From the NCBI GenBank assembly GCA_001949185.1, contig BDGG01000010.1, positions 1,559,773-1,623,772 on the forward strand: a stretch of 64,000 bases of DNA, in the 5' to 3' direction. The notes under the pieces were generated by a model. The model was not told the DNA's origin. It was given only the letters and a program-made list of their open reading frames with translations, and did not search any database. Positions 15,242 through 29,768 of the stretch are shown piece after piece. The stretch comes from Ramazzottius varieornatus (Eukaryota; Animalia; Tardigrada). Each line of letters starts with the position of its first letter. The stretch's first letter is position 1. Position numbers and translations under genes: made by a program.

Positions 15242-16586
15242 CCTCCCGACGCTGTTTGCGGACCTCCGAAATACGAATGCCATGGAGTAACAATTCTTTT
15301 TTGTCTTCAGGTGGACGGGGAAGGAAAGGCTTTGGTGGTGAAGATGGATGGACATTGGTGGTTCCTGACATCGTTTCTTCCGTTACGATTTGAGATGACA
15401 GTTTGTGGCGCTAGTAACGACTGCAATGAAAGTCTGGTATTTGTTGGTAGGTTGCTGAACTTATCAGGGTTGATTCAAGGTTCTGAGGCTGATGATGCGA
15501 TTCAACACTATACGGAGTCGCGCACCGCCTGCAGCTAATTACGGTAAGCGCTCACCTATACGTAAATCGTGCACCTTCCATCAGCTAGCAGCTAAGATAG
15601 ATTGCTACCGTACATTGTTGTACCGCTCCAACGAGCGACTTCAGTTCGTGCGCTGTACACTGGTGTGCGAAAGAAAAAAACTTCACCTTACAGAAATAAA
15701 TCCAGCACTTTTCGCAGTTGACGGTAATTATGTCGATCGACCCAGCATCTTCACTGATGTGCTGACGAACCCCGAGACTATTGTGATACAACCGAAGCAC
15801 CATCTTTTCGAAGCTTCTATTCCGTCCACGATCTGTATCTGTTTTTCGTTATCCAGAACTTCAAATCCGCAAGAATGGAATTTGTGGAATACTGAAATAC
15901 TTTTGCCCGACTTTCCAACCGAAGAACGAAGGAAAGTTGCGCCGCTCTCGACGAACCGGAAGTGACGACATCAACGGTTAATGTGAGCAAGTACGTTCAT
16001 GGTATCTCCGTACCACATATCCAAGTTCAATATCGCGATCTCTGAGACAGAAATATAACTGCCGATAGATTGACAATGACACTTTTTTCTGAATTGGATT
16101 GGTTGGTATTGGGTTTCTAACACCACTAAGAAATCGGATCCTCACAACTTGGCGCGAGGCTTCTTGTCGTATTTGTCTTTGCTAACAGGTAACGCTAAGT
16201 AAGCACTACAGTATTGTAAGCGGAAATGAAGGTTTCTTTTTTTTGGGGAGTCCTTACTATAAGCAAGTGCGGAGGACATACGCGTTGGTCATTTAATTCC
16301 TCCTGTGAAGAACCACGTGTGTACGACTTGTTTATGTTGCAGACTATCGTATTTCCTTCAAAATGCTACCTTGAGTCAACATCATTTTTCTACCGGTCGT
16401 TCGCGAATAGTGAACGTCGTAGCTCTTCCATACTAAACTTCGATCTGTGTGGTTGCAGTGAAGGATTCGGAGACGAGGAAACTATGACCGAAAGATCGTC
16501 ACCGATTGAAGCCCGCTATAACGATGCGGAAATTGTCGAGGATTTTTCGCTGGAACTTTTTCATCAATAAAGCCGACTGGATTTTA

Positions 16587-19500
16587 ATGAAATGGATTAT
16601 CGGTAAGTTCCCCGTTTTTTTAGAAGAAGTCGAGTTGAAGATGTCAGTTGAAGATGCCAAACATTCTGGGCAGTATCATACCAGAACGGCGACAGAAAAC
16701 TGAGCCTCGAATGTGGCAATAACATACATTTTCGTAAATAGCACGCGTGTTGTGTCAGTTCTGTATGATGGCGACGTGATTGACAATCCAACATCGCTTC
16801 TTATTAATATTTCGGCTCTTAATATTCTATTCAAATATTTATCTGTGTGTAGAACGGCGCTTAATCGATCAAAAGAAGATTTCAATATTGAGTACCGCAG
16901 TACGTAAACCAGCCAGCGTGGGCTCCCACATCCTTTTACACACAACTGTTCTAAACAAACGCAGTTCGGTTTTATTACTGCGCAAGTCCGTTTTCTAAAG
17001 TTGGTTCAGCTGAAAATATTATCCCGATAATAAGGATATCGACATCGTGCCAGACGTAGTCGGGAGAGTTTTCGCTGTTGATTGGGTTGTTTTGGTGTCA
17101 CAGATTTCCTCATCGCGGTTCTTCTGAACAGCACTCCAACATCGCATGTCTCCGCTCACGTTGTCCTAACCTATCCACCTGCTCGGAAATACGCGTTGGA
17201 CTTCTTGGACAATGTACACAGTCCGGAGCCTTGCGGAATGCCAAAAGGTTCGTACCGATCGGAAATGTGTTACAGTTATGAGTCGCTCTTATGACATAGA
17301 GAAACTGTGCAAAGAAGTCAGAATGTCTAAGTAGTGGAGTCTAGTAAGATGTCTGAAGGCATACTTTCTTCTTTTTTCTCGCTGCGTGAGTCACTGCAAA
17401 ACGAAACTATTTTTGCGTTATTTTATCGGTCAGAATACCGGTGCGACTGCTTAACATTATCATGAATTATGTAATGTGTTGTTTTTTGGCAGGTCTCAGC
17501 GAACCTACTTTCTTACAAGTCGGCTCAGAAATCGAAGTCACGTGGCATTCAGCATATCCAGACGAGGTGATTTTGACGAAAAAAATTAGTCTGTTTGCTC
17601 ACGAACTCGACGGTTAATCTGTTTACCCACGAAAACTTCCCTGTGCCCCAGTCACAGGAAATGCCGGCAAATACCACACACTAGTGCAACACTCAGGTGC
17701 AGAATCCTTTACTGATAGGATACTAGAAAGAGCGTAAGCAGGTTTATGAGATGGGTTTGCCGGTTTTCCGCACCGATTGATTTTTGACTTTGTTGTTGAT
17801 TCGAGGTTTGATTGTGGTGTTTGTTCCTGACAGGGCGGATATGCTATTGAGCTTTTGGATGAGAACTACGACAGAGTATCGCAGCTCTTTCCCGTACTTG
17901 CCGGCAGAGAGCCCCGCACATCAGTATCGTTCGAGAATATATGGCCCAATACCACTTCTCAAACGATAACATTACCAAAGAATGTTAGCTGTGACAAGTG
18001 TACCCTTCGGATAACTCGCCAAGCTCGTCAATGGGAAAATGTTAGCCGGGAGCTGGAAGGCTACGTCTTCCGCAGTTGCGCGGATGTGAACATTGTGGAC
18101 CAAGGTGCGTAAAGTGAAAACGTCTGCCGAGATAATTAGGGCACGCGCGAGTAGTCAAGGGTGCTCCAGCTACGCAGCCGTGTCCAGTCACCCGACAAAC
18201 AAGCGAGCATCACCTGAGCTGTGGGTCTAGCCGGTCGATCATTAACGCACCATCCATGTTGATTTCTTGCCCTTCGTCATATGTCACTCACTTTTTCCTT
18301 CGATTGCTAAACGTCGGTTGTCTCTCTTGCAGTGGATAATTCTCAAAAGTGCTCTAGTCATGGCTCCTGGACCGTGCAACAAAAGTGCAACTGTGATGAC
18401 CTATACACTGGCAATGTCTGCCAGTACAAAGGTGTGAAAGTTATCAAGGTTTTATGCAGCAAATATGAAGCAATAAAATACTCGAAACATTTTATAGGCG
18501 AGCCGAAAAAGCAATGACGAAATCGTAATCCGTTTATTCTTCAGAAATATGTCTCAAAGAAGCCGACTGTAACTTCCGGGGTAAATGTATCGATTCCGGC
18601 TCGAATTCGCATCCCAAGAAGCGATGCAACTGTCTTCCGGGTTGGCAAGGCAGGAACTGCAGTCGCGGTAAGCCGTCTTTGTTTGGACCCAGCACACCAC
18701 GATGCAGTACCATGATATCAACGTCAAAAATTGTTTTGTTGCTCATCTCTTGTTCAACAGAGTCATTCTTGAAGACCAAAGTGTTCAACAAAGCCTTATT
18801 CACACACTACAAGCTGGCTGATGGATTCGATCTCTACTGGAAAATCGACAAGAACCTCGCCGAAATTGAATTCGCAGTCCAGTCCAAGTCTTCCTCATGG
18901 ATCGCTATAGGGTGGAGACCGCTCAGTAAGTACCAACCCATCGTCCCGCAACTTGTAAACTTTAGGAGAGGTTCAGGATAGGTTATTTTTCCAGCTTTAA
19001 CCGGAGAGTGTCGGCAGCAGTTCCCGAAGCTCGCCAACGAAACATACTCTCCACACGGAGCCTCGTTACTTGCGAAGGAGCTGACCATGGACGACAGTGA
19101 ATTCGAAGCAATTAGGCCAAGGAGCGGTAAGGTCTCTGAGGAGCTGGACGAGCCACTCGCCATTCGTCCCCGACGCGAGGTTATGGCTGTCCCACAAAAC
19201 GTAACACTACTTGACCCGGCTGTTCTCTTCAACAATGCCTCTGAAGGTTAGCTCAAAATCCTTTCTAAGACTCCTTAACACAATTCAGTTTCGAGGTGCA
19301 GTATATCGAGCACTGTTTGTTTCAGAACTTCATCCAATGGACTGTACAGATATCGTGATCGGGTTCGCCAGGAATGGTTTCGGTCAAGTGCAGGACTCTT
19401 ACACCAGAGACCGGTCTACGCCACAGGACGACTCTTTCTACGGAGGAATGGACAACCTTATAGGATCCATCGCATTCGAAGAGGACGGTGTTACGATCAT

Positions 19501-22500
19501 GCGCTTCAAGAGAGCTTTAGCCGGTGCGACTCTTTCCTTGATACTTTTAGAATAAGACGTGGGCTCATGTTTCGTTTGTTCCTCTTCAGCGGTTGATCCG
19601 GCGGACCATTCGTTTTTGAACAGTCCGATGCACGTGATATTTGCTCGCGGACAAGAGAAGGGTAGTTTCCATCACTATCCACCGTTGAGCATGGAAGCGG
19701 ACAATAAGTCCTTGACTGAGTTCTACAAACCCGATGATTTACGCTACCACGGTGCCGGTGCTAATAACAGGGGCGTTGCTTTAATCAACTTTTTCGACGA
19801 GAAGAACGAACTGGCGACGCTTCAGTCACCTTGTGTGGGAGAGTGGAAGGCTCCACTGAACTGTGTGGGCGTTGCTTGTCAGTACAAAGCGCGATGGTAA
19901 GTACATTTTTTAACAGATTTCTCACAGACTTTTGATCAGAAATAAAAAACGGTAATATTGTAATTTGATCTCCAACTAATCACTTCATGGAGAGAATTTC
20001 CGATAAAAGCGCGGGCCGAGGTGTCAAAATCTCGTCTCCCAAGCGTGGTGCCCCCCTTAACAAATATATGAGGGGTCTGAGCTCTCAGCGTGGCCTTGTA
20101 CAGGGCCTCAAAAATTCTGGTCTCCCACGGGGAGACGAGTCTGCTGGTCGTGCCCGCGCTGCCAATCAAACGTAATAATTTTCTAATAATATTCTGTGTG
20201 TTTCAGGGAGTTTCTGGAGGACTCGGACTCTATTTACTTCAATATTCAGGCAAAAGCAAAAGACCGATGGATCGGAATTGGGTTTAACGGGGAAGAGAAT
20301 CACATGGTAATGGTCAAAGAAAATCAATTCAGAGAAAAATATACACAGCCCGCCAAGGTTTTAGTTTTCTTGTCTGTTTACAGCCAGGTTCGGACATAAT
20401 CATTGGCTGGGTGGACGATGACGGAAGAGTTCAGCTTACTGACAGGCACGCTGATGGACACCGAACACCCATACTCGACAAGAAGCAAGATCTACAGAAC
20501 ATCGCCGGAAGCGTCGACAGTAACTTCATGACCATCGAGTTTACGAGACTACGCGTGGTAAGCAATAATCTTTAGGAAGAGCGAAGACCATTTCCCTGCA
20601 AAGAGAAACAATTTAACGTTTTTTCCTGTAGACAAATGACACGAACGACTTCCAGTTTCACGATGAAAAATGTGCCTTCTTCCTGTTTCCGGTCAACGGT
20701 GGGAAATTTGACAAATATTCAGGTAAGTCAGCGACAACGCTTTCCGCCGAAGTTCGACCATAATTGTGACTGACGCGGAAAATTTATTGTCTTTCGTAGG
20801 CGTTATGAGTAAGCATGAGTTCATCCCCACGGTTCTACCGAACAAAGTATGCGTGCAAAGTTGCCGGGTTAATGGTACGTCCATCGGTGGTTCCCCAGCC
20901 GCGCTTTTACACGATGCAGCTTCAGAGGTTCCCTCTGCCGGTAAGAGCTGTGCAACGTCACGAAACTGCAGAATTTTAGCCTTGCTTACCGCTCTCTGTA
21001 CTTGCTCGTTCCATTCAAGATTTTCCTAGCTTACTTCCGTAACGTGGCCTTAGGAGGCGTTGGTGATGCAATTATTCCGTGTCCTTCTTGTACTTAATAA
21101 TGTTCCCCTCGTATCTTTACGGCTCTTGTGCATACGATATCCACCTTTTGTACTGTGAACCACACTCACTAACAGTAAACGCACAATTTCTGGTGGCTGT
21201 GTTTTCTTCTGGTGACGGGTTCTCCATTCTTACTATATCAATTACTAACCGCTGGAAGGGCTTCCTTTTTCTTCTTCTTCTTCTTCTTCTTCTTCTTCTT
21301 CTTCTTCTTCTTCTGTGGAACTTCGCGATATTTTTTTACCATGCCAGCCTTTCCTAAGACCGGAAACGTCACATTTGGTAAATTTCAGAATTGGAAAACT
21401 CCAGTTTGATAGTGCCACAGGATCGAGCTGATGGGGAAGCGCTAGTCGTAATCAACACTACGGCGACTACTGTAGCAACATCAGTCTCCTCATCAACCTT
21501 GGCTACGACCACGAGTCTAACAAGCATCGCCACAACACCTTCCGGTCTGTCCAATTTACCCGGTCCTTCCATCCAACTGCCGCCGGCTGTCAAACGGTTT
21601 TTGTCCCGAGGAAACTCCTATCCGGTATCACCTACCTCCACCACGTCAAGTCCACCCATCAAGTCTCCTCCCGCCACCACTCAAGGGGACATCACAACTT
21701 CATCGACAGTCACAGCCGCCGTTCCGGTCTCTACGTCGGCAGCTTCAACAACTTCCTGGATGACCTTACCATCCACGACTACACTGCCTACCACAAAATT
21801 CTCCTCTACACTAGCCTTTCTCGACATCGCTACCACCAGCGCCATCACCACCACGACGACCGCTCCATCAACCACTCAGTCAACCAGAATCATTTTCTTC
21901 GGTCCAGCAGCCTCAACAGCGCCCGCGAAAGGTCCGATAGCCCTATCAACAACCACCACGACTCCCGTTACCTCCACGGCAAGAACGTTAATCGTGGCGA
22001 CAACAACTTCGACCGGGAGACCGATCGTTACGCAAAACTTATCCGTTACAATGCCCACTGTGACCACCCCACCGACGACTGGAGCTCCTTCGGTAACGGG
22101 CATTTCCAACTCGGAACCGGGCGGGAACTGGACGCAGTGCTATGGCCAGTGGCGCTTCCCCCCAGATTGCGTAAGTACCACCTTTTCTTTCGATTGGTCG
22201 ACAGTATTTACCGTTCTTGATTTTCGCTTACAGACACCGGCGAACTGTGAATATGTGATTATGTGGGAGTACGAGCCTAGCGCCGATGACATTCATTTCT
22301 ACATTCGTAGTAGTCATCCCGACCGGTGGACAGGTGTCGGGTTCTCTCCTAATGCGGCAATGGTACACTTGGCATATTCCTTTGTTTTGAGCTGTTCATT
22401 GATTCAAGTCTTCCTTTCAGCCTCATTCCGATGTGATATTTGGGTTCGTGACACCGGACGGTAACGTTACCATAACAGACGGGACCACCGAAGGTCACTA

Positions 22501-25500
22501 TCCTCCCATCAAGTCCAGCCCGTCCATGTTGACTAACATTGCTGGGCGTGTGAAGGATGGGAAAGTAGAGCTGTCTTTTACTCGTCCGCGAGGCTTCGAC
22601 ATCAACCGATATGCCATGTTCGGTGTGCGAGAGCAAGACTGCCCTCACTTTCTCTTCCCCGTCGAAGGTACTTGCATGAAAGGCCCGAATGTCCGTCTTT
22701 ACTTTCTAAGCGTTTTCCTTTCTAATCCAGGTGGACCGTTTGACTCAACAACTGGTTTCATACTGAAACATGCCAAGACCCCCAAGATCAGTCGTCATCG
22801 TATCTGCGTCAAGCAGTGCTCCGCAGAAGACCCGCCGGCACCTTTCACCCTACCACGGCTGTCCGAGCCTATCGCTGCCCCACTAACAGCTCCGACAACG
22901 CCACCTAGTGTGCTGACCACGACACAGTCCACCACGACGACGACCGAAGAAGAAACCACCACCACACAGCTGCCGGTGATTGAAGGCACACCATGCCGAG
23001 CCATCTTCTCTTTCCCCAGAGATTGCAACACTTCCACCTGTGTCTATGTAGCACAATGGGATTACCTACCCCCCACCGACGAAATCAACTTTGTCATTCA
23101 GTCCAACCGGCTGAACACGTGGACTGGTATTGGCTTCTCGGACAGTGGTGAAATGCCGTACTCGGATATGGCTATAGGGTGGGTGAACGGCGATGGTCGT
23201 CCAACCATCAGCGATCGGTGGAGTACGACGTATGCTGAACCACAGCGGGACTTTCAACAAGACTTGACGCACCTTGGAGGGACCCTTCGATACGGCACAC
23301 AGGTAAGACCAGACTTCTGGCGTTGATTTACTTCAATGCCACGGCTCCTTAATTTGACTACGCCTTAGAATGTTTTTTTTCTTCTTCCAGATCGTGACTT
23401 TCACCCGGAAGCGACAAACTGGTGATGAACGAGACTACCAGTTTTCCGACACGTCCTGCCCGTACCTGATCTTTCCGGTCTTCGGAGGTACATACGATGA
23501 CGCCAGCGAGATCATCGACAAGCACGAGGTTACTCCAGTAGTCTCCGATCAACGTATCTGTATTCGTGCATGTCGCCAACGAACAACCCTTCCGCCTTCG
23601 CTAGACAGCTCTGCTGCTGTCCTTGCCAATAGTTCCTCTCCGGTACTGTCCACTTTCGATCAGAAGCTCCTCGTGATCAACCCGGCTCAGTTGACCGAAG
23701 CCGGCATGACACCTCCACCAACCACGACTCGACGTCCAACTGGAGCATTCAGCAATGCCGGTAGCACCAAGACCGGACTGGTCATTTCCAGTGTGGCGCT
23801 TGATGGTTCGAAGACGCAAAGTCCTTCCAGCGCTAGTCTAACTTACCGAAAGAAGTCTCTTCAGCCAAACAGCACCATCAGTATCGGTTCTTCAAGTCCA
23901 GCGACTAGCTTCGTGACGACCACGACAGCACTTCCGTCGCCCGAAGAAATGCTACGTGTCATGCTCCTTCAGGCAGGGTTGAACAATGTCGCTGTGCAGA
24001 TACCAGCTAACGACCAACCTCCTCGATTCGTCACTGCTATGACACCACTTCCGGGTAACGCCTCGTCTCGCGCCACTGCGAATGCCGGTGGTGCTTCGAC
24101 TACTTTCGGTGTCACAAAATCAGGCATTGAGTTCGTAGTAACCTATCCAGCTACCACCGTTGCTTCTAGAAGTGACATCCCGCAAGGTAACAGGCTAGGC
24201 TCCGTACCGGAAAACAATAATAGCCAGAACAGTAGCGCCTTACTCGGGAGCTCCGCACAAGCCTCAAAGCCTTCCGGCAGCTCTGCAGTCGATGAGGCAA
24301 TGAGCCAGGCACAGCTTCTAGCACTGGCCGGTATGGTCATCGGCAACTCGACGTTACTACCACCGAACCTGACGCCGCCGCCAGGGTCCGTTCAGATCGG
24401 TGTAGTCTTGAGTTCTCCACCTGACGTGAGACAAGAGAGCGATATAAGCGTTCTCTCGAGTGGAAACAGCCCCATTGAGCCTATCGTCAATCAAAATACC
24501 CGCGTGAAGAGCTCGGAGACGGTGGTGACGGGCTTCAACCTCGGTCAAACTCCGACAGCCGGAGAACTGCTGGTTCGTGCCAAAAGCCAGAACCCGAGCA
24601 TTGGCCCCCTACCAGCTGCTTCGGGATCCCCACCTCCAGCTATCTCGATGACACCTGAACAAATGCTCCAAGCGCTTTTAAAGGAGTCCGGCATGGGAGA
24701 AGTAAAGGTGGAGGGTGTGGATACCTCACCTGCTGCCAATTCTAAAGAGCCATCTGCCCCTGTTTCTGGACGAATTCGCAATAACGGTAAGTGCCTATCG
24801 GCCTTTTGTGGAAAGACAATGCTTGGAAACCCGAAAAAATAATCTACCCAGATAAGTCTCTAACCAGAAAATCAACAAAATATACGTAGCAAAATGTGCG
24901 GGAAATATGCTGATGTTTATCAGTGCAGTGCAGTGCAGACAAAATCCAAAGGGTAAAAAGTAAAACCATCCTGTGTGTTGTCGAGCAAGGTCTATAGAAT
25001 GAACATAAAGTTATTTACTTTTTTGGCAGCTCCGCTAAGAGACAGACACGACACGGTACCCGCTGCGCCTACTCGATACGGTGCGGAAAAACAGCGCTCG
25101 CGTCTGGGTGGATCTTCAGGCTCACTGGGTGCATCGGGCTCAGCCCCAGTGCCCTCCATCGTTCGGTTCTCCACAGCCCTTCCACCTGTTCAACAGAAGG
25201 CGGAAGTCTTCATCAGTGCCGCCTCGGACAGAGTGTCAAGTCCATCTGGACCTGCTCCTGCTGCACAGGCGTCTGGTTTAGTAGCTTTGGCTAATGACCA
25301 AGGTACCATCGGCGATAATGAAGACTGCGGAGGGATATTCAAGTACCCGTCTGGCTGCATCAAAGAGGCCTGTGCCTACGTTGCCACATGGCGACCTGGA
25401 AGTAGCGTAGACGAAATAGAGTTCTCTATCGAAACTGACCGTCCAGATTTGTGGTCGGCCATTGGATTCTCAGACGACAAACTGATGGTAGAGAATCTCT

Positions 25501-28500
25501 AGATTTGATGCGTAAAAGTGGCAATTTATTTTCATGGTCGGCTTTTTCCGAATTTACAGAAAGGATCGGATATCATCTACGGTTTTATCCGAACCAACGG
25601 CATGCCGCGCTTGGTTGAAGCTTTCGCGGCTGACTACATGGCTCCAGTTCGTGACTTCCGGAATGAGATCCGAGTCATTGACGGTGGTCGCACAGGAAAC
25701 CGAGCTTTCTTCCACTTCGCTCGAAAGCTGACCACGCGTAACCCGAATAACTTTGACTTCGGAAATGGTCGCTGTCCGTTCTTCAAGTTCCCTGTCCTGG
25801 GTGGCTCATTCGACCCGAACACTCTGATGATCGACAAACACCAGCGTACTCCGATAGTCAGTCCAACGCGGATATGCCTCAAGTCCTGCACCGCACCACG
25901 AGTAACCAAACCACCAGGCAAGGTGCTCATGGTACCTCCGACAGTTCCTTCCGTAGTGCGACCTGTTCAAGAGCCAGTGGGCTCTGGCAGTGTGGAGAGA
26001 CCTGTGGTGACGTCGGCGTCTGCGAAGAACGCGTCGAGTAATTCTTCTCCGGATGGGAGTGTGCTGAGCTGTGTCGGTGAATTCCGGTTCCCAGATGGGT
26101 GTACGCCTTCCACATGTGAATATGTGGCGCAGTGGGAGTATGTCGGACCCACTGACGAGATAAAGTTCAACGTCATATCCTCTCGGCCTGATGAATGGAC
26201 AGGTACAGTAACTCGACCTATTGTGTTAACAAAGTACAACCGTCTGTCACGTACTTACATACAGCCCGAGGCGGCCAAGTGACTACCACCTACATACAAG
26301 ATTAGAGAATTCTCGACAGGGTTTTTGCGCAAATTCGAAACTGATCTTCTTTGGTCTAAAATTCTTTTCTAACCTCCTAAAAAATAACTGGTTAGAAATC
26401 TGCCCAGTGGACGTCGAAATCGGCGTGAAACCGGGCATGGTGAACAGTGGAAACCGCCAACAACTTTTGTAGTTTTCGGAGTCCATTTCCAAAATTTATT
26501 TCTGAGTTTGCAGTTGACAGTCTGCGGTGATCTTATTTGAAACAAATAGAACAAGGACCTGGCCACATTAAGAATGGTCGAAAGCATGAATCTACCGTTT
26601 GAGGCAAGAGCAACAAGTTTTGCCGCAAAGGGGGATTTCCCGGCAAAATGGCCAAATTCAACAGTTTTAATTTTCTTGCCAAGTTAGTGTGGCTATTTTA
26701 TGGTATTATTTGGTTTTAAATTACAAGCTAGATAGTCTCACGTGCGTTAAAATCAAGCTGCGGCTTCATAACCAAACACGGAATTTTAAAAGTAAGGTTT
26801 TGGTCATGGAAAGGTATCTTCCCCACCGGAAGTCATGCCGATCAACTTTCCCAGACTATCTCTCAGCCGATGTGAATCTGCCATATTTCAGTGGAAATAG
26901 CTTGAAAAGTTCTTTGAGATGTGTGGAGGAGCGGACGATAAAACGTAAACTGATTTTTTCATAGCGCTTTGAGCAAGTGGTAGTCACTTGGCCGCCTCAG
27001 GCTGTGCATCCAGCTGTAATTTTCTCATGGAATTTCTGGATGCGTGTGCGCGTGATTTATATCGGGAGCTCTCACATGAGACACTAAAGACAGAAATTTA
27101 GAGTTTCTGCTTCAACTATTCTTCTTCACCTGACCAGCTTTATGCTGTTCCAGGTATCGGATTCAACGACAAGCGACAAATGCCTGGTGCCGATATCTTG
27201 TACGGATGGGTGGACCCAGACACTGCCAAGCCCACACTCGTGGATGCTTCTGCAAGTGCCTACGTCACGCCAACACGAGATCTGAGACAAGATGGCAAGA
27301 ATGTGACGGGAAAACGCCTGGACCAGATCATGTCCTTGTCGTTCACACGGAAGCGCAGCACGAACGACGACAAGGATTACCAGTTCACCGATCAGAAGTG
27401 TCCGTACTTCGTGTTCCCCATCCGTGGTGGAGAGTATGATCCGGGTTCAATGATGATCATGAAGCACAAAAGCACGCCGATGGTTTCGACGTCGAGAGTG
27501 TGTATCACATCTGCCTGCGCTCCAGCAAGTAAGTCTAGGGAGGAGCCCAATCATTTGTTATAACACATTTTCTACTGTAATGAGTGGATATTTTGACATC
27601 CTCTGTTATTTCAAATTTTACTTAATGTTTATTCCTCTTAGCATTACCGCCTCCATCAGCCCTTTCCACACCTCCGCCCAACGATAGCCTTCGAGGCCCG
27701 GTGCTCATGACGGACCTTGCCAACTCCAACGCAACTGCTCGGGAAAGCCCAACGACTACTCTGCCACCTCCACCCAGAACGAAAGCTGTTGTCTTACCAC
27801 CCGATCCATGTAAGATGATACTCCTGTAACTGCCCACTGAAAAATTGTTTCGGGGATAAGGACATGGCAGAATAAATGTGTAGCACTTTGTATTTTCTTC
27901 AGTTTCCTACATGCCATGTGAGGGTCAATGGCGCTACCCAGAGAACTGTGTGGAACCCAACTGTATTTATGTCGCATCATGGAACTACTTGGACGATGCC
28001 GATGCAATTCGCTTTGTCGTCAAAGCTAAGGCGACCGGCTGGACCGGCATCGGATTCAACGACGACATGATGATGGTCAGTGATTCTTCCATAGCCTCCA
28101 GCATGGTTTACTACAGCGTACAGCACACTAGAGACCTTATTGATTACGTTTTGATAGGCCGGTACCGATGCAATCATTGGTTGGGTCACCAGCAAGAACA
28201 CCGTGGTGGTCACGGATCGCCATGCGGAGGGTAACAGTGGCGCCCCTATGGCCGATGAACAGACCGTGTACGATGTGGGTGGTCGTCGCGAAGATGGCTA
28301 TCAGATCATCGAGTTTACAAGAAAGCGGGATACCCAGGACCCTAACGGACAACACTACGTCTTTGGTGACCAAAAGTGTCCGTTCTTCATTTTCCCCGTG
28401 GTCGGTGGCGGATATGACAGTTATGGCGGCATTCAAGCACATAGCCTGAAAGCTAAACCGAAAATTTCGCCGCAACGAATTTGCGTTAGAAGCTGCAATA

Positions 28501-29768
28501 TTGGTGAGTTGGGAAACCATAAATGTAACTGGATAATGCTTCAACTGTAAAGTTTTCTGAACAGATGTTCCACGCCGAATGGTCGTTTCTTTCCGCATTG
28601 TGGATCGATCATGGTCTCCCGAGTTGGAATCAAGACAGACAGCAGCGTTCAAGAAGCTAGAAGCTGAACTTGCAGATCCGCTGGGGAAGCTCTTCGGGAA
28701 CACACCGGGATATCGAGGCAGCCGAGTCATCGCTTTCCGACCCGGAAGTGTGGTAGCTGATGTGGAGATCGCCATCGACCCAACAGCCAATCAGACTTCC
28801 GTAGCTGGAGCTAAGATTATTAAAATGATCCTGATGAATCAAGTACAGCAGAAGCAGCAGATCGGTCTCTTCGCTGTCGACCCGGCTAGCCTTTCGATCT
28901 CAAACGCCGAACGTAGGTCTTGCTGTTCCTTCCATTTGACTGAACTCCGTTCGGCTTGTGAATGGACTCACTATGCTAATGGGGTTTTTATTCGCAGAAA
29001 TTGTATTGAGCTCGGGAACAACAGCTCGTACCGACGTAGTCTCCCAGTCCACGTCGAACAAAGCACCTGAATCCGAAGTGCGGACGTACGCTATCATAGG
29101 TGGCGTTGTTGGTCTTATCGCTATCCTTCTGTTCTTGGCTTTCGGTAAAGTCTGGTACGATCGCAAAGCCCGGCTAGAACGTCGACTTCAACGCGAGGTA
29201 GGGTCTTAAACTCATACGATTGGGTTTCTTCTCAGTCTCTGTGGCAAGTATTTTGAGGTAACTGTGTATATCAATGCAGCAAAAGCCAGGAGTACCTGCT
29301 AGACAGGCGCTGGTCGCCATCGGTCCACCGCAGTATCCACGTCGACAGAGCCGAAGCAGCTCTATTGAACCCGTACGGTCGGAAGGACATGGCCAGAGTC
29401 CATCCATCTTCCCCATGCCGACCGGTATGCGAAATGGGAGCCGACCAGACAGTTCGCTGACAAGAACAAGCTCGGCCAACCCTCCTCCCGACTACTACGA
29501 CAACGACTCCAACGGAAAGGTTTCTCGGAAAACGCGACGCACAGCCATAGCTGACGAACATCCACTCCATCGGCTAAGTACCAACGAAAGTGATCGGACG
29601 TTTACAACTTACAGCAGCGATCAGTCCAGACATATTAACAGGAAGAAGACCCAAGACGCCTTGCAAGAGTGGGATCGAGTCGACGACAGTGACTACAAGC
29701 GACCACCAGACTTTTACTTCATGCCCAGCCAGCGACGCTGGACCCAAGTTCCTCAAACTTTTCAATAA
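16587..29768 (+). CDS. nahoda: Nahoda-like type I membrane protein: signal peptide, LPMO-like His1 domain, 2 EGF, 7 DOMON, Thr/Ser-rich stalks, SEA, TM, cytoplasmic tail (many exons)
   Basis: Exon1 ATGAAATGGATTATCG|gtaag (16587-16602) joins 17104 to give MKWIIDFLIAVLLNSTPTSHVSA|HVVLTYPPARKYALDFLDN; EGF repeats 18333-18667; DOMON WxxIGF..M..SD...G and KH motifs; SEA FRPGSVV at ~28735-28755; TM YAIIGGVVGLIAILLFLAF; ends DFYFMPSQRRWTQVPQTFQ*. Orthology to Drosophila nahoda is from memory of architecture. Confidence 0.85.
20008..20161. mobile_element. ~150-bp GC-rich foldback element in an intron (old hAT-type MITE candidate)
   Basis: agcgcgggc..ctcgtctccc / gggagacgag..gcccgcgct arms; flanks ccgataaa and ccaatcaa (6/8 match) resemble an 8-bp TSD. 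Confidence 0.55.
21271..21314 (+). repeat. (CTT)14 microsatellite, intronic
   Basis: Direct reading. Confidence 0.97.
26262..27004. mobile_element. Non-autonomous Tc1/mariner-type DNA element (~743 bp) in the intron splitting DOMON 6
   Basis: TIRs cagcccgaggcggccaagtgactaccac / gtggtagtcacttggccgcctcaggctg (1 mismatch); flanks TA and TG. Confidence 0.85.

What the first reader, a model, noticed from the sequence alone, without database searches (positions are those of the whole stretch)
17157..18104. Unannotated LPMO-like histidine-brace domain at the mature N-terminus
Predicted signal cleavage VSA|H leaves His at position 1 (CAC 17157-17159), followed by VVLTYPPAR, like HGxLxxPPxR in AA10/AA15 LPMOs. 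The domain then shows PCG, GSEIEVTW, GGYAIELL, LPKNVSCDKCTL and YVFRSCADV. These match AA15 landmarks (G..I.V, GYFEF, LP...TC..CVLQW, F..CADI), with Phe at the usual axial-ligand position five residues before the Asp. At about 145 aa it is compact, closer in size to LPMO-like copper proteins such as fungal X325/Bim1. It spans three exons, so the ORF track hides it.
Basis: partly seen in the sequence, partly recalled or inferred. Interest (0 to 1): 0.88.

Follow-up and report, generated by a model that had tools for sequence, protein, structure and literature searches.

The report
LPMO-like domain, histidine brace incomplete
The start of a large animal cell-surface protein is a true relative of the copper enzymes called LPMOs, but here one of the two copper-holding histidines is an aspartate, so it probably does not work as a normal LPMO.

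Summary
Window 17157-18104 (+) holds three GT/AG-bounded exons.

The domain belongs to a bilaterian family with the layout signal peptide, His1 domain, 2 EGF, multiple DOMON, and in some members SEA and a transmembrane helix. I found it in tardigrades, arthropods, an annelid, nematodes, hemichordates and a tunicate.

The family is homologous to LPMOs:
- Pfam LPMO_10 or BIM1-like hits at or just under threshold in 17 of 37 homologues.
- A family profile finds bacterial LPMO_10/BIM1-like proteins at E 1e-10 to 1e-8.
- For an AlphaFold model of the closest homologue, the 19 best PDB matches are all LPMOs (Z up to 7.2).

The histidine brace is not complete here. The second brace His, which aligns to His91 of TdAA15A, is His in all 37 homologues that cover that site. 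In the window it is Asp (GAC, 17561-17563). A near-invariant Glu is Gln. The other 29 of 31 conserved positions are kept.

Verdict: a genuine LPMO-like domain with an altered, probably non-canonical metal site. I did not build the joined spliced protein.

The parts
16587..16602 (+). Exon 0: ATG and the first 5 codons plus 1 nt of the signal peptide (MKWII). The donor is G|GTAAGT.
   Evidence: Read directly. It is the only way to supply an ATG, because the exon-1 frame has no in-frame ATG upstream of His. No RNA evidence.
17104..17247 (+). Exon 1: the rest of the signal peptide (…FLIAVLLNSTPTSHVSA), then the mature N-terminus HVVLTYPPARKYALDFLDNVHSPEPCGMPK. The His1 codon CAC is at 17157-17159.
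   Evidence: tblastn of homologues ends at 17246/17249. His after the signal peptide in 33/33 homologues.
17493..17566 (+). Exon 2: (G)LSEPTFLQVGSEIEVTWHSAYPDE. It carries the position of the second brace histidine.
17561..17563 (+). Codon GAC (Asp) at the position where every homologue has the second brace His (W+6; equivalent to His91 of TdAA15A).
   Evidence: Paper PMC5823890 for His91 as a copper ligand.
17834..18104 (+). Exon 3: GGYAIELL…LPKNVSCDKCTLRITRQARQW…EGYVFRSCADVNIVDQ. It holds the beta-sandwich core, the CxxC motif, the axial Phe and the CAD motif. Gln replaces the near-invariant Glu of the 'EW' motif.
18333..18431 (+). Exon 4: first EGF-like module.
   Evidence: EGF_Teneurin E 7e-4. 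Homologue alignment.
18545..18667 (+). Exon 5: second EGF-like module.
   Evidence: Read. Homologue match.
18772..28400 (+). Seven DOMON domains separated by Ser/Thr/Pro-rich linkers, over many exons. This is context, not part of the finding's range.
   Evidence: PF03351 matches on C10, converted to window coordinates 19331-28355..
28585..28860 (+). SEA domain.
   Evidence: PF01390, E 1.8e-14.
29075..29768 (+). Transmembrane helix (…IIGGVVGLIAILLFLAFG…) and cytoplasmic tail to the stop codon.
   Evidence: ORF translations. Hydrophobic stretch read by eye. Same SEA+TM end in homologue P0001.

Best explanation
The stretch encodes the mature N-terminal domain of a type-I cell-surface protein. The layout is: signal peptide, LPMO-like domain, 2 EGF, 7 DOMON with mucin-like linkers, SEA, transmembrane helix, tail.

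The domain is a true but distant homologue of LPMO_10/BIM1-like copper proteins. It belongs to an uncharacterised subfamily found across bilaterian animals. In that subfamily the copper site would be built from the N-terminal His, a second His six residues after an invariant Trp, and an axial Phe.

This gene keeps His1, the Phe, all four cysteines and 29 of 31 conserved positions. The second His is Asp and a near-invariant Glu is Gln. The most likely reading is a well-folded, selectively retained LPMO-like module whose metal site has been remodelled. It no longer forms the T-shaped three-nitrogen (N3) brace, so it most likely cannot do LPMO-type oxidative chemistry. It probably serves as a binding or structural head, or as a weak Cu(II)-type site, at the tip of the DOMON stalk.

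Shown: homology, fold class, architecture, and the two substitutions. Inferred: loss or change of copper chemistry, and the role of the domain.
For: Gene model and motifs.

Family and architecture.

Homology to LPMOs:
- LPMO_10 in 11 and BIM1-like_dom in 6 of 37 homologues at E<=0.01, with scores of 18.9-22.3 bits against cut-off 23, and 26.6/27.7 against 27.
- The family profile A2 finds PF03067/PF20238-bearing bacterial proteins at E 1.2e-10 to 1.1e-8 in 5.8 billion sequences. These align motif for motif.
- phmmer of P0002 against PDB puts TdAA15A first (E 0.014), with the family's His on His91 (for His91 as a ligand).

Fold: AlphaFold model of P0002, pLDDT 73. 18 of the top 20 chains among 48,161 PDB representatives are LPMOs (AA16 and AA15 Z 7.2). 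All of the top 19 in the second look are LPMOs.

Substitutions: His in 33/33 by the W+6 pattern plus four Glandiceps sequences, against Asp in the window. 29/31 conserved columns are kept, and the two that differ are His to Asp and Glu to Gln.

The exons are open and single-copy in the genome, which argues against a pseudogene.
Against: The window's own domain was not folded or profile-searched as one piece, because the joined step was left out by instruction. Exon by exon, Pfam gives nothing.

No read or RNA evidence could be obtained, so a C/G base error (CAC to GAC) or an unseen splice form is not formally excluded.

No close orthologue (>60% identity) was found, so I cannot tell whether the Asp is fixed in the lineage.

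An N-terminal amine, a His1 imidazole and a carboxylate can still bind Cu(II). X325 and CopC include an Asp ligand in addition to both brace histidines, so 'no copper' is an inference.

Structural Z-scores of about 7 are middling on their own.
Confidence: 0.7

Rival explanations
1. One reading: a functional copper histidine-brace LPMO (AA15/AA10-like) that oxidises chitin or another polysaccharide. The DOMON domains would feed it electrons.
For: His1 after the signal peptide, the axial Phe, the LPMO fold and LPMO profile similarity. DOMONs of homologue P0001 also hit the CDH cytochrome family (PF16010, E 1.8e-12), the natural electron donor of fungal LPMOs.
Against: The second brace His is Asp in this gene and in none of the 37 homologues. 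A near-invariant Glu is also changed. No family member has been assayed. X325/Bim1 shows that even an intact brace does not imply LPMO activity.
Confidence: 0.08
2. A remodelled but still working metal or redox centre. The N-terminal amine and His1 imidazole plus the Asp carboxylate would bind copper (X325 and CopC include an Asp ligand in addition to both brace histidines). The site would act in copper capture or hand-off, or as the terminal acceptor of electrons from the seven DOMON domains.
For: Six homologues hit BIM1-like_dom. X325 uses an Asp carboxylate as a fourth ligand and is linked to copper transport. Apart from the His-to-Asp and Glu-to-Gln changes the domain is strictly conserved, which suggests retuning rather than decay. 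The protein is tethered at the cell surface next to DOMON domains.
Against: In X325 and CopC both brace histidines are retained and the Asp is additional. Here the Asp replaces a His. A harder O-ligand disfavours Cu(I), and so disfavours redox cycling. Haem binding by these DOMONs was not tested here.
Confidence: 0.17
3. Artefact: the true protein has His at the second brace position, and the Asp comes from an assembly base error or from a wrong exon 2/3 model.
For: A single transversion separates GAC from CAC. The site lies two codons from a splice donor. No reads or RNA could be examined.
Against: The junction keeps length and register with all homologues. No alternative exon or acceptor gives His. 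By size and contig count the genome matches a high-coverage Sanger+Illumina assembly (inference). A second conserved polar residue is changed as well, which one base error cannot explain.
Confidence: 0.05
4. A chance resemblance: a generic Ig/FN3-like sandwich unrelated to LPMOs.
For: Pfam finds nothing in the window's exons. Foldseek E-values are weak (0.011-0.017). Z about 7 is in the range common for beta-sandwiches.
Against: The profile search reaches annotated LPMO_10/BIM1-like proteins at E 1e-10 with all motifs in register. The top 19 structural matches are all LPMOs. TdAA15A is the best PDB sequence hit.
Confidence: 0.01

Closest known systems
AA15 LPMOs (e.g. TdAA15A from Thermobia domestica, PDB 5MSZ)
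   Same: An animal, secreted protein with His1 directly after the signal peptide and the LPMO beta-sandwich. The motif around the second His (…PH.G.F…), LP..[ST]C..C.L and F/Y…C.D[IV] line up. TdAA15A is the best PDB sequence hit of the closest homologue (E 0.014) and ties for the best structural match (Z 7.2, 119 aligned, rmsd 3.5).
   Different: About 145 aa against about 195 aa, with only 18% identity. Pfam LPMO_10 stays below threshold. The domain is fused to EGF, DOMON, SEA and a transmembrane helix instead of being free or CBM14-linked. In the window the His91 equivalent is Asp. No activity data exist.
X325 / Bim1 LPMO-like copper proteins (Pfam BIM1-like_dom, PF20238)
   Same: Compact size. 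Cell-surface tethering. An LPMO-like fold without a flat polysaccharide-binding face is a plausible shared feature. PF20238 matches six family members over nearly the full profile, one above the cut-off. An Asp takes part in metal ligation in X325.
   Different: X325/Bim1 proteins are fungal and GPI-anchored, and they keep both brace histidines. This is an animal transmembrane protein with DOMON repeats in which the Asp replaces the second His. The window's own exons do not hit PF20238.
AA16 LPMO-like proteins (PDB 7ZE9)
   Same: Tied best structural match (Z 7.2, 113 aligned, rmsd 3.4) and of similar small size (162 aa).
   Different: Fungal, 13% identity, and no sequence-profile link was found here.
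Bacterial LPMO_10/BIM1-like membrane-anchored proteins (e.g. the Myxococcaceae MAG protein P0074)
   Same: These are the closest sequence relatives outside animals (E 1e-10 to 1e-8). His1, PCG, W.ET..H.G, VTLPAGVTC..CTLQ and YYSCADI are in register, and they have a C-terminal membrane anchor.
   Different: They have Tyr rather than Phe at the axial position, no EGF or DOMON, and an intact second His.
Cellobiose dehydrogenase plus LPMO (two-protein fungal system)
   Same: A haem-type DOMON/cytochrome domain sits next to an LPMO-type domain. DOMONs of homologue P0001 hit CDH-cyt.
   Different: Here both are in one polypeptide, with 7 DOMONs and no flavin dehydrogenase domain. Haem binding and electron transfer are untested. 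The acceptor site in this gene lacks a brace His.

Membership tests
LPMO superfamily (histidine-brace copper proteins) | His as the first residue of the mature protein (signal peptide cleaved directly before it) | tested here: met
   …HVSA|HVV with Val at -3 and Ala at -1. His at the same place in 33/33 homologues. SignalP was not available and the joined N-terminus was not submitted.
LPMO superfamily (histidine-brace copper proteins) | A second, internal His completing the T-shaped N3 brace | tested here: not met
   The position equivalent to TdAA15A His91 is Asp, codon 17561-17563. It is His in all 37 homologues that cover the site.
LPMO superfamily (histidine-brace copper proteins) | Axial Phe or Tyr near the C-terminal C.D[IV] motif | tested here: met
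   The window reads YVFRSCADV. Across the family this position is Phe in 62 and Tyr in 2 of 64 sequences. It is Tyr in the bacterial relatives.
LPMO superfamily (histidine-brace copper proteins) | LPMO-type beta-sandwich fold | tested here: inconclusive
   Met for the closest homologue P0002 (45-58% identical to the window's exons): Z 7.2 to AA15 and AA16, and the top 19 matches are all LPMOs. The window's own domain was not folded, because the joined step was left out.
LPMO superfamily (histidine-brace copper proteins) | Copper binding and oxidative polysaccharide cleavage | not testable with these tools
   Needs EPR or ITC and product analysis.
Pfam LPMO_10 (PF03067) / AA10-AA15 | Profile score above the gathering cut-off (23 bits) | tested here: not met
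   Window exons: no hit, and no hit in the own genome. In the ten homologues listed individually the scores were 18.9-22.3 bits, below the 23-bit cut-off. 11 of 37 match at E<=0.01, best 5.5e-5, but the bit scores of the others were not listed.
Pfam BIM1-like_dom (PF20238) / X325 | Profile score above the cut-off (27 bits), both brace His plus an Asp ligand, and a GPI anchor | tested here: not met
   Window: no hit. Homologue P0031 scores 27.7 bits and P0030 26.6. The window lacks the second His and has a transmembrane helix, not a GPI signal.
Animal His1-domain / EGF / DOMON family (uncharacterised; noted in PMC6950343) | Signal peptide, His1 domain with PPAR.Y.LDFLD, PCG, W…PH.GG, C..C and FWSCAD motifs, then two EGF modules and DOMON repeats | tested here: met
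   29 of 31 conserved columns are kept. The exceptions are His2 to Asp and Glu to Gln.

The most novel reading that the evidence does not exclude
A natural one-chain redox machine on animal cell surfaces: an LPMO-derived metal head wired to a string of haem-type DOMON domains. In this tardigrade the head has been retuned from a His/His brace to a His/Asp site with a new chemistry, such as copper reduction or capture, or controlled peroxide handling at the cuticle or apical matrix. That would be a new class of N-terminal-His metal centre.
Probability: 0.12. Interest if true: 0.8.

Novelty: new variant of a known kind. Interest (0 to 1): 0.55.

Why it matters
LPMO-like histidine-brace proteins are known mainly as secreted enzymes (AA9-AA17) or fungal copper-handling proteins (X325/Bim1). 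This gene belongs to an animal-wide, membrane-tethered subfamily that databases name only 'uncharacterized' or 'DOMON domain-containing' protein. In the Pfam hits stored for these homologues the N-terminal domain is not called.

Its fusion to up to eight DOMON domains suggests a built-in electron path, which would be testable in insects, horseshoe crabs or tunicates that keep the full brace.

The window's copy changes exactly the second copper-ligand position and one other conserved polar residue while keeping everything else. It therefore offers a ready-made natural comparison with intact-brace orthologues for asking what the brace is needed for in this family. For annotation, it warns against calling this gene an LPMO.

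Tried and rejected
- Pfam on the three exons separately found nothing relevant.
- phmmer of exon 3 and of P0006 against PDB sequences found nothing relevant.
- Foldseek against PDB gave only weak E-values (0.011-0.017), although LPMOs ranked first.
- The search for homologous proteins with P0002 alone returned only itself.
- PF03067 and PF20238 against the window's own genome gave no match. So no canonical AA15 gene was detected exon-wise, which does not prove absence.
- The joined spliced protein was not built, searched or folded. All searches used single exons by reference or database homologues. As a result there is no signal-peptide predictor result and no model of the window's own domain.
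- An alternative exon or acceptor that would restore His: none exists.
- Pseudogene reading rejected: the exons are open, single-copy and 29/31 conserved.
- No close orthologue (>60% identity) of the window's domain turned up in any database search.

Full report
**1. What is in the sequence.**

Window 16500-19000 reads as a spliced animal gene on the + strand.
- A 16-nt first exon (ATG at 16587, donor G|GTAAGT) encodes MKWII.
- Exon 1 (17104-17247, acceptor …cacag) continues with …FLIAVLLNSTPTSHVSA, then HVVLTYPPARKYALDFLDNVHSPEPCGMPK.
- Exon 2 (17493-17566) gives …LSEPTFLQVGSEIEVTWHSAYPDE.
- Exon 3 (17834-18104) gives GGYAIELL…LPKNVSCDKCTLRITRQARQW…EGYVFRSCADVNIVDQ.

The predicted signal peptide has 23 residues, with Val at -3 and Ala at -1. 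tblastn of eight homologues against the whole window matches exactly these three pieces, in order, ending at the proposed junctions. No second copy of any exon exists.

Everything below rests on single exons given by reference, or on database homologues.

**2. The rest of the gene.**

Downstream come two EGF-like exons (18333-18431 and 18545-18667). Then there are seven DOMON domains separated by Ser/Thr/Pro-rich linkers (converted to window coordinates 19331-28355). After those come a SEA domain (E 1.8e-14), a hydrophobic transmembrane stretch near 29075-29150, and a tail ending at 29768. The protein is therefore a type-I surface protein with the His1 domain at its far tip.

**3. The family.**

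Exon 3 alone found 41 proteins at E<=1e-3 in a 1.84-billion-protein library. Follow-up searches show a family with the same order: signal peptide, His1 domain, 2 EGF, DOMON repeats, and in some members SEA and a transmembrane helix. Members include:
- tardigrades (Hypsibius exemplaris P0014, Paramacrobiotus P0033, P0068 and P0069);
- horseshoe crab, scorpion and crayfish;
- insects (Athalia, Diamesa, Anopheles, Lutzomyia, Cydia);
- a nematomorph and a nematode;
- the annelid Owenia;
- hemichordates (Saccoglossus, Glandiceps);
- the tunicate Clavelina.

All are named 'uncharacterized' or 'DOMON domain-containing' protein. The Pfam hits stored for them list EGF, DOMON and SEA but not an N-terminal domain.

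The closest relative of the window's domain is P0002, a 210-aa fragment from an unnamed Logan assembly. It is 57%, 58% and 45% identical to exons 1, 2 and 3.

**4. Is it LPMO-like? Yes.**

- Pfam LPMO_10 matches 11 of 37 homologues at E<=0.01, and BIM1-like_dom matches 6 of 37. Scores lie just under the LPMO_10 cut-off (18.9-22.3 bits against 23) and at the BIM1-like cut-off (26.6 and 27.7 against 27).
- A profile of the family (A2, which includes the window's exons as separate rows) finds, among 5.8 billion proteins, bacterial proteins carrying PF03067 and/or PF20238 at E 1.2e-10 to 1.1e-8. One of them is annotated 'lytic polysaccharide monooxygenase'.
- In alignment A3 these bacterial proteins share His1 after the signal peptide, PCG, W.ET..H.G, VTLPAGVTC..CTLQ and YYSCADI, in register with the animal family and the window.
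- phmmer of P0002 against all PDB sequences puts the insect LPMO TdAA15A (5MSZ) first (E 0.014).
- An AlphaFold model of P0002 has mean pLDDT 73 and a confident core. Compared with 48,161 PDB representatives, 18 of its 20 best matches are LPMOs: AA16 7ZE9 (Z 7.2, 113 aligned, rmsd 3.4), AA15 5MSZ (Z 7.2, 119 aligned, rmsd 3.5), then AA9, AA11, AA10, AA13 and fusolin. In the second look the top 19 are all LPMOs.

Each Z alone is middling. The clean enrichment together with the profile evidence makes homology secure.

**5. The brace is incomplete in this gene.**

In one search the His of the family's …YPH.GG motif aligns with residue 91 of TdAA15A. The AA15 paper states that His1 and His91 bind the copper (PMC5823890). 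That position is the sixth residue after an invariant Trp.
- It is His in 33 of 33 homologues matched by pattern, and in the four Glandiceps sequences that have a two-residue insertion.
- It is also His in all seven bacterial relatives.
- The window has Asp (GAC, 17561-17563): …TWHSAYPDE|GGY… against …TWHLAYPH[KRD]GG[FY]….

The exon 2/3 junction keeps the length and register of the family. No other donor, acceptor or exon could bring in a His.

Of the 31 alignment columns that are at least 85% conserved in 26 family members, the window keeps 29. The kept residues include His1, the PCG and CxxC cysteines, the axial Phe and the SCAD motif. The two exceptions are this His (100% conserved) and a Glu (92%, the 'EW' motif) that is Gln in the window.

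This pattern points to a folded, constrained domain with a deliberately altered polar site. It does not look like decay.

**6. Source organism (inference).**

The window's assembly has 55,842,812 bases in 200 contigs. That fits the published Ramazzottius varieornatus assembly of 55.8 Mbp in 199 nuclear scaffolds plus the mitochondrion, built from Sanger and 160x Illumina data (PMC5034306). The tardigrade homologues share local features with the window, such as LLD.xY. If the identification is right, a base error at the Asp codon is unlikely.

**7. How it most likely works.**

In family members with the full brace, the domain probably binds copper at the tip of a long glycosylated stalk. The stalk's DOMON domains resemble the cytochrome domain of cellobiose dehydrogenase (PF16010 hit in P0001, E 1.8e-12). 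That domain is the natural electron donor of fungal LPMOs, so a built-in electron path is a reasonable but untested idea. It is the subject of note s1-792710.

For this gene, the N3 T-shaped site cannot form. The amine and imidazole of His1 plus a carboxylate may still hold Cu(II). But a hard oxygen ligand disfavours Cu(I), and so disfavours the redox cycling that LPMOs need. This last point is from established coordination chemistry and is my inference.

I therefore favour a non-canonical role: a binding or structural head, or a retuned metal site. I put canonical LPMO activity at about 8%. X325/Bim1 shows that even intact braces need not be LPMOs (PMC7924993; PMC10952591).

**8. Comparison and novelty.**

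The domain is not a member of AA15, LPMO_10 or BIM1-like by their profile thresholds, and it fails the second-His criterion. It does work from the same fold and N-terminal-His design.

[quoted passage not shown] I found no experimental work on the family.

I rate it a new variant of a known kind. The family-level architecture is the more interesting part. The window's copy is a natural His-to-Asp variant of it.

Noticed in passing
G000:C8 about 364.7-366.6 kb (L011:2738-4594; also L002): This is a second, short-type paralogue, the orthologue of Hypsibius BV898_15301 (P0014). Its N-terminal exon reads …ISACSA|QVRNTFPPARKYDFDAL…, with Gln where the family has His1. The rest of the LPMO-like domain and the first EGF (P0014 residues 68-192) were not found in the ~17 kb fetched around it (C8:355000-371999). 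The block for residues 193-378 lies on the opposite strand, and residues 378-467 return to the + strand. It is either a rearranged pseudogene or an assembly inversion.
   Followed up: partly
window 18003-18035 (…RITRQARQWEN…): The Glu of the 'EW' motif, 92% conserved in the family, is Gln here. This is the only other conserved column, besides the second brace His, where the window departs from the family. Its position relative to the metal site is unknown.
   Followed up: partly
whole genome G000: Neither PF03067 (LPMO_10) nor PF20238 (BIM1-like) gave any exon-wise match in the window's own genome. So no canonical AA15-type LPMO gene was detected. Split exons could hide one.
   Followed up: no
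window 18772-29768: The gene continues with seven DOMON domains, Ser/Thr/Pro-rich mucin-like linkers (for example 21400-22170 and 23560-24800), a SEA domain, a transmembrane helix and a ~165-aa cytoplasmic tail. Homologue P0001 has eight DOMONs with hits to the CDH cytochrome family.
   Followed up: partly
window 21274-21313: A (CTT)n microsatellite of about 13 units lies in what appears to be an intron.
   Followed up: no
P0059, P0060 (EukProt gene models; organisms not identified here): These family members replace the Asp of the SCAD motif (SCALV, SCSLV). P0060 combines DOMON with a cytochrome b561 domain (PF03188). That hints at a link between this head domain and transmembrane electron transfer in other lineages.
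   Followed up: no
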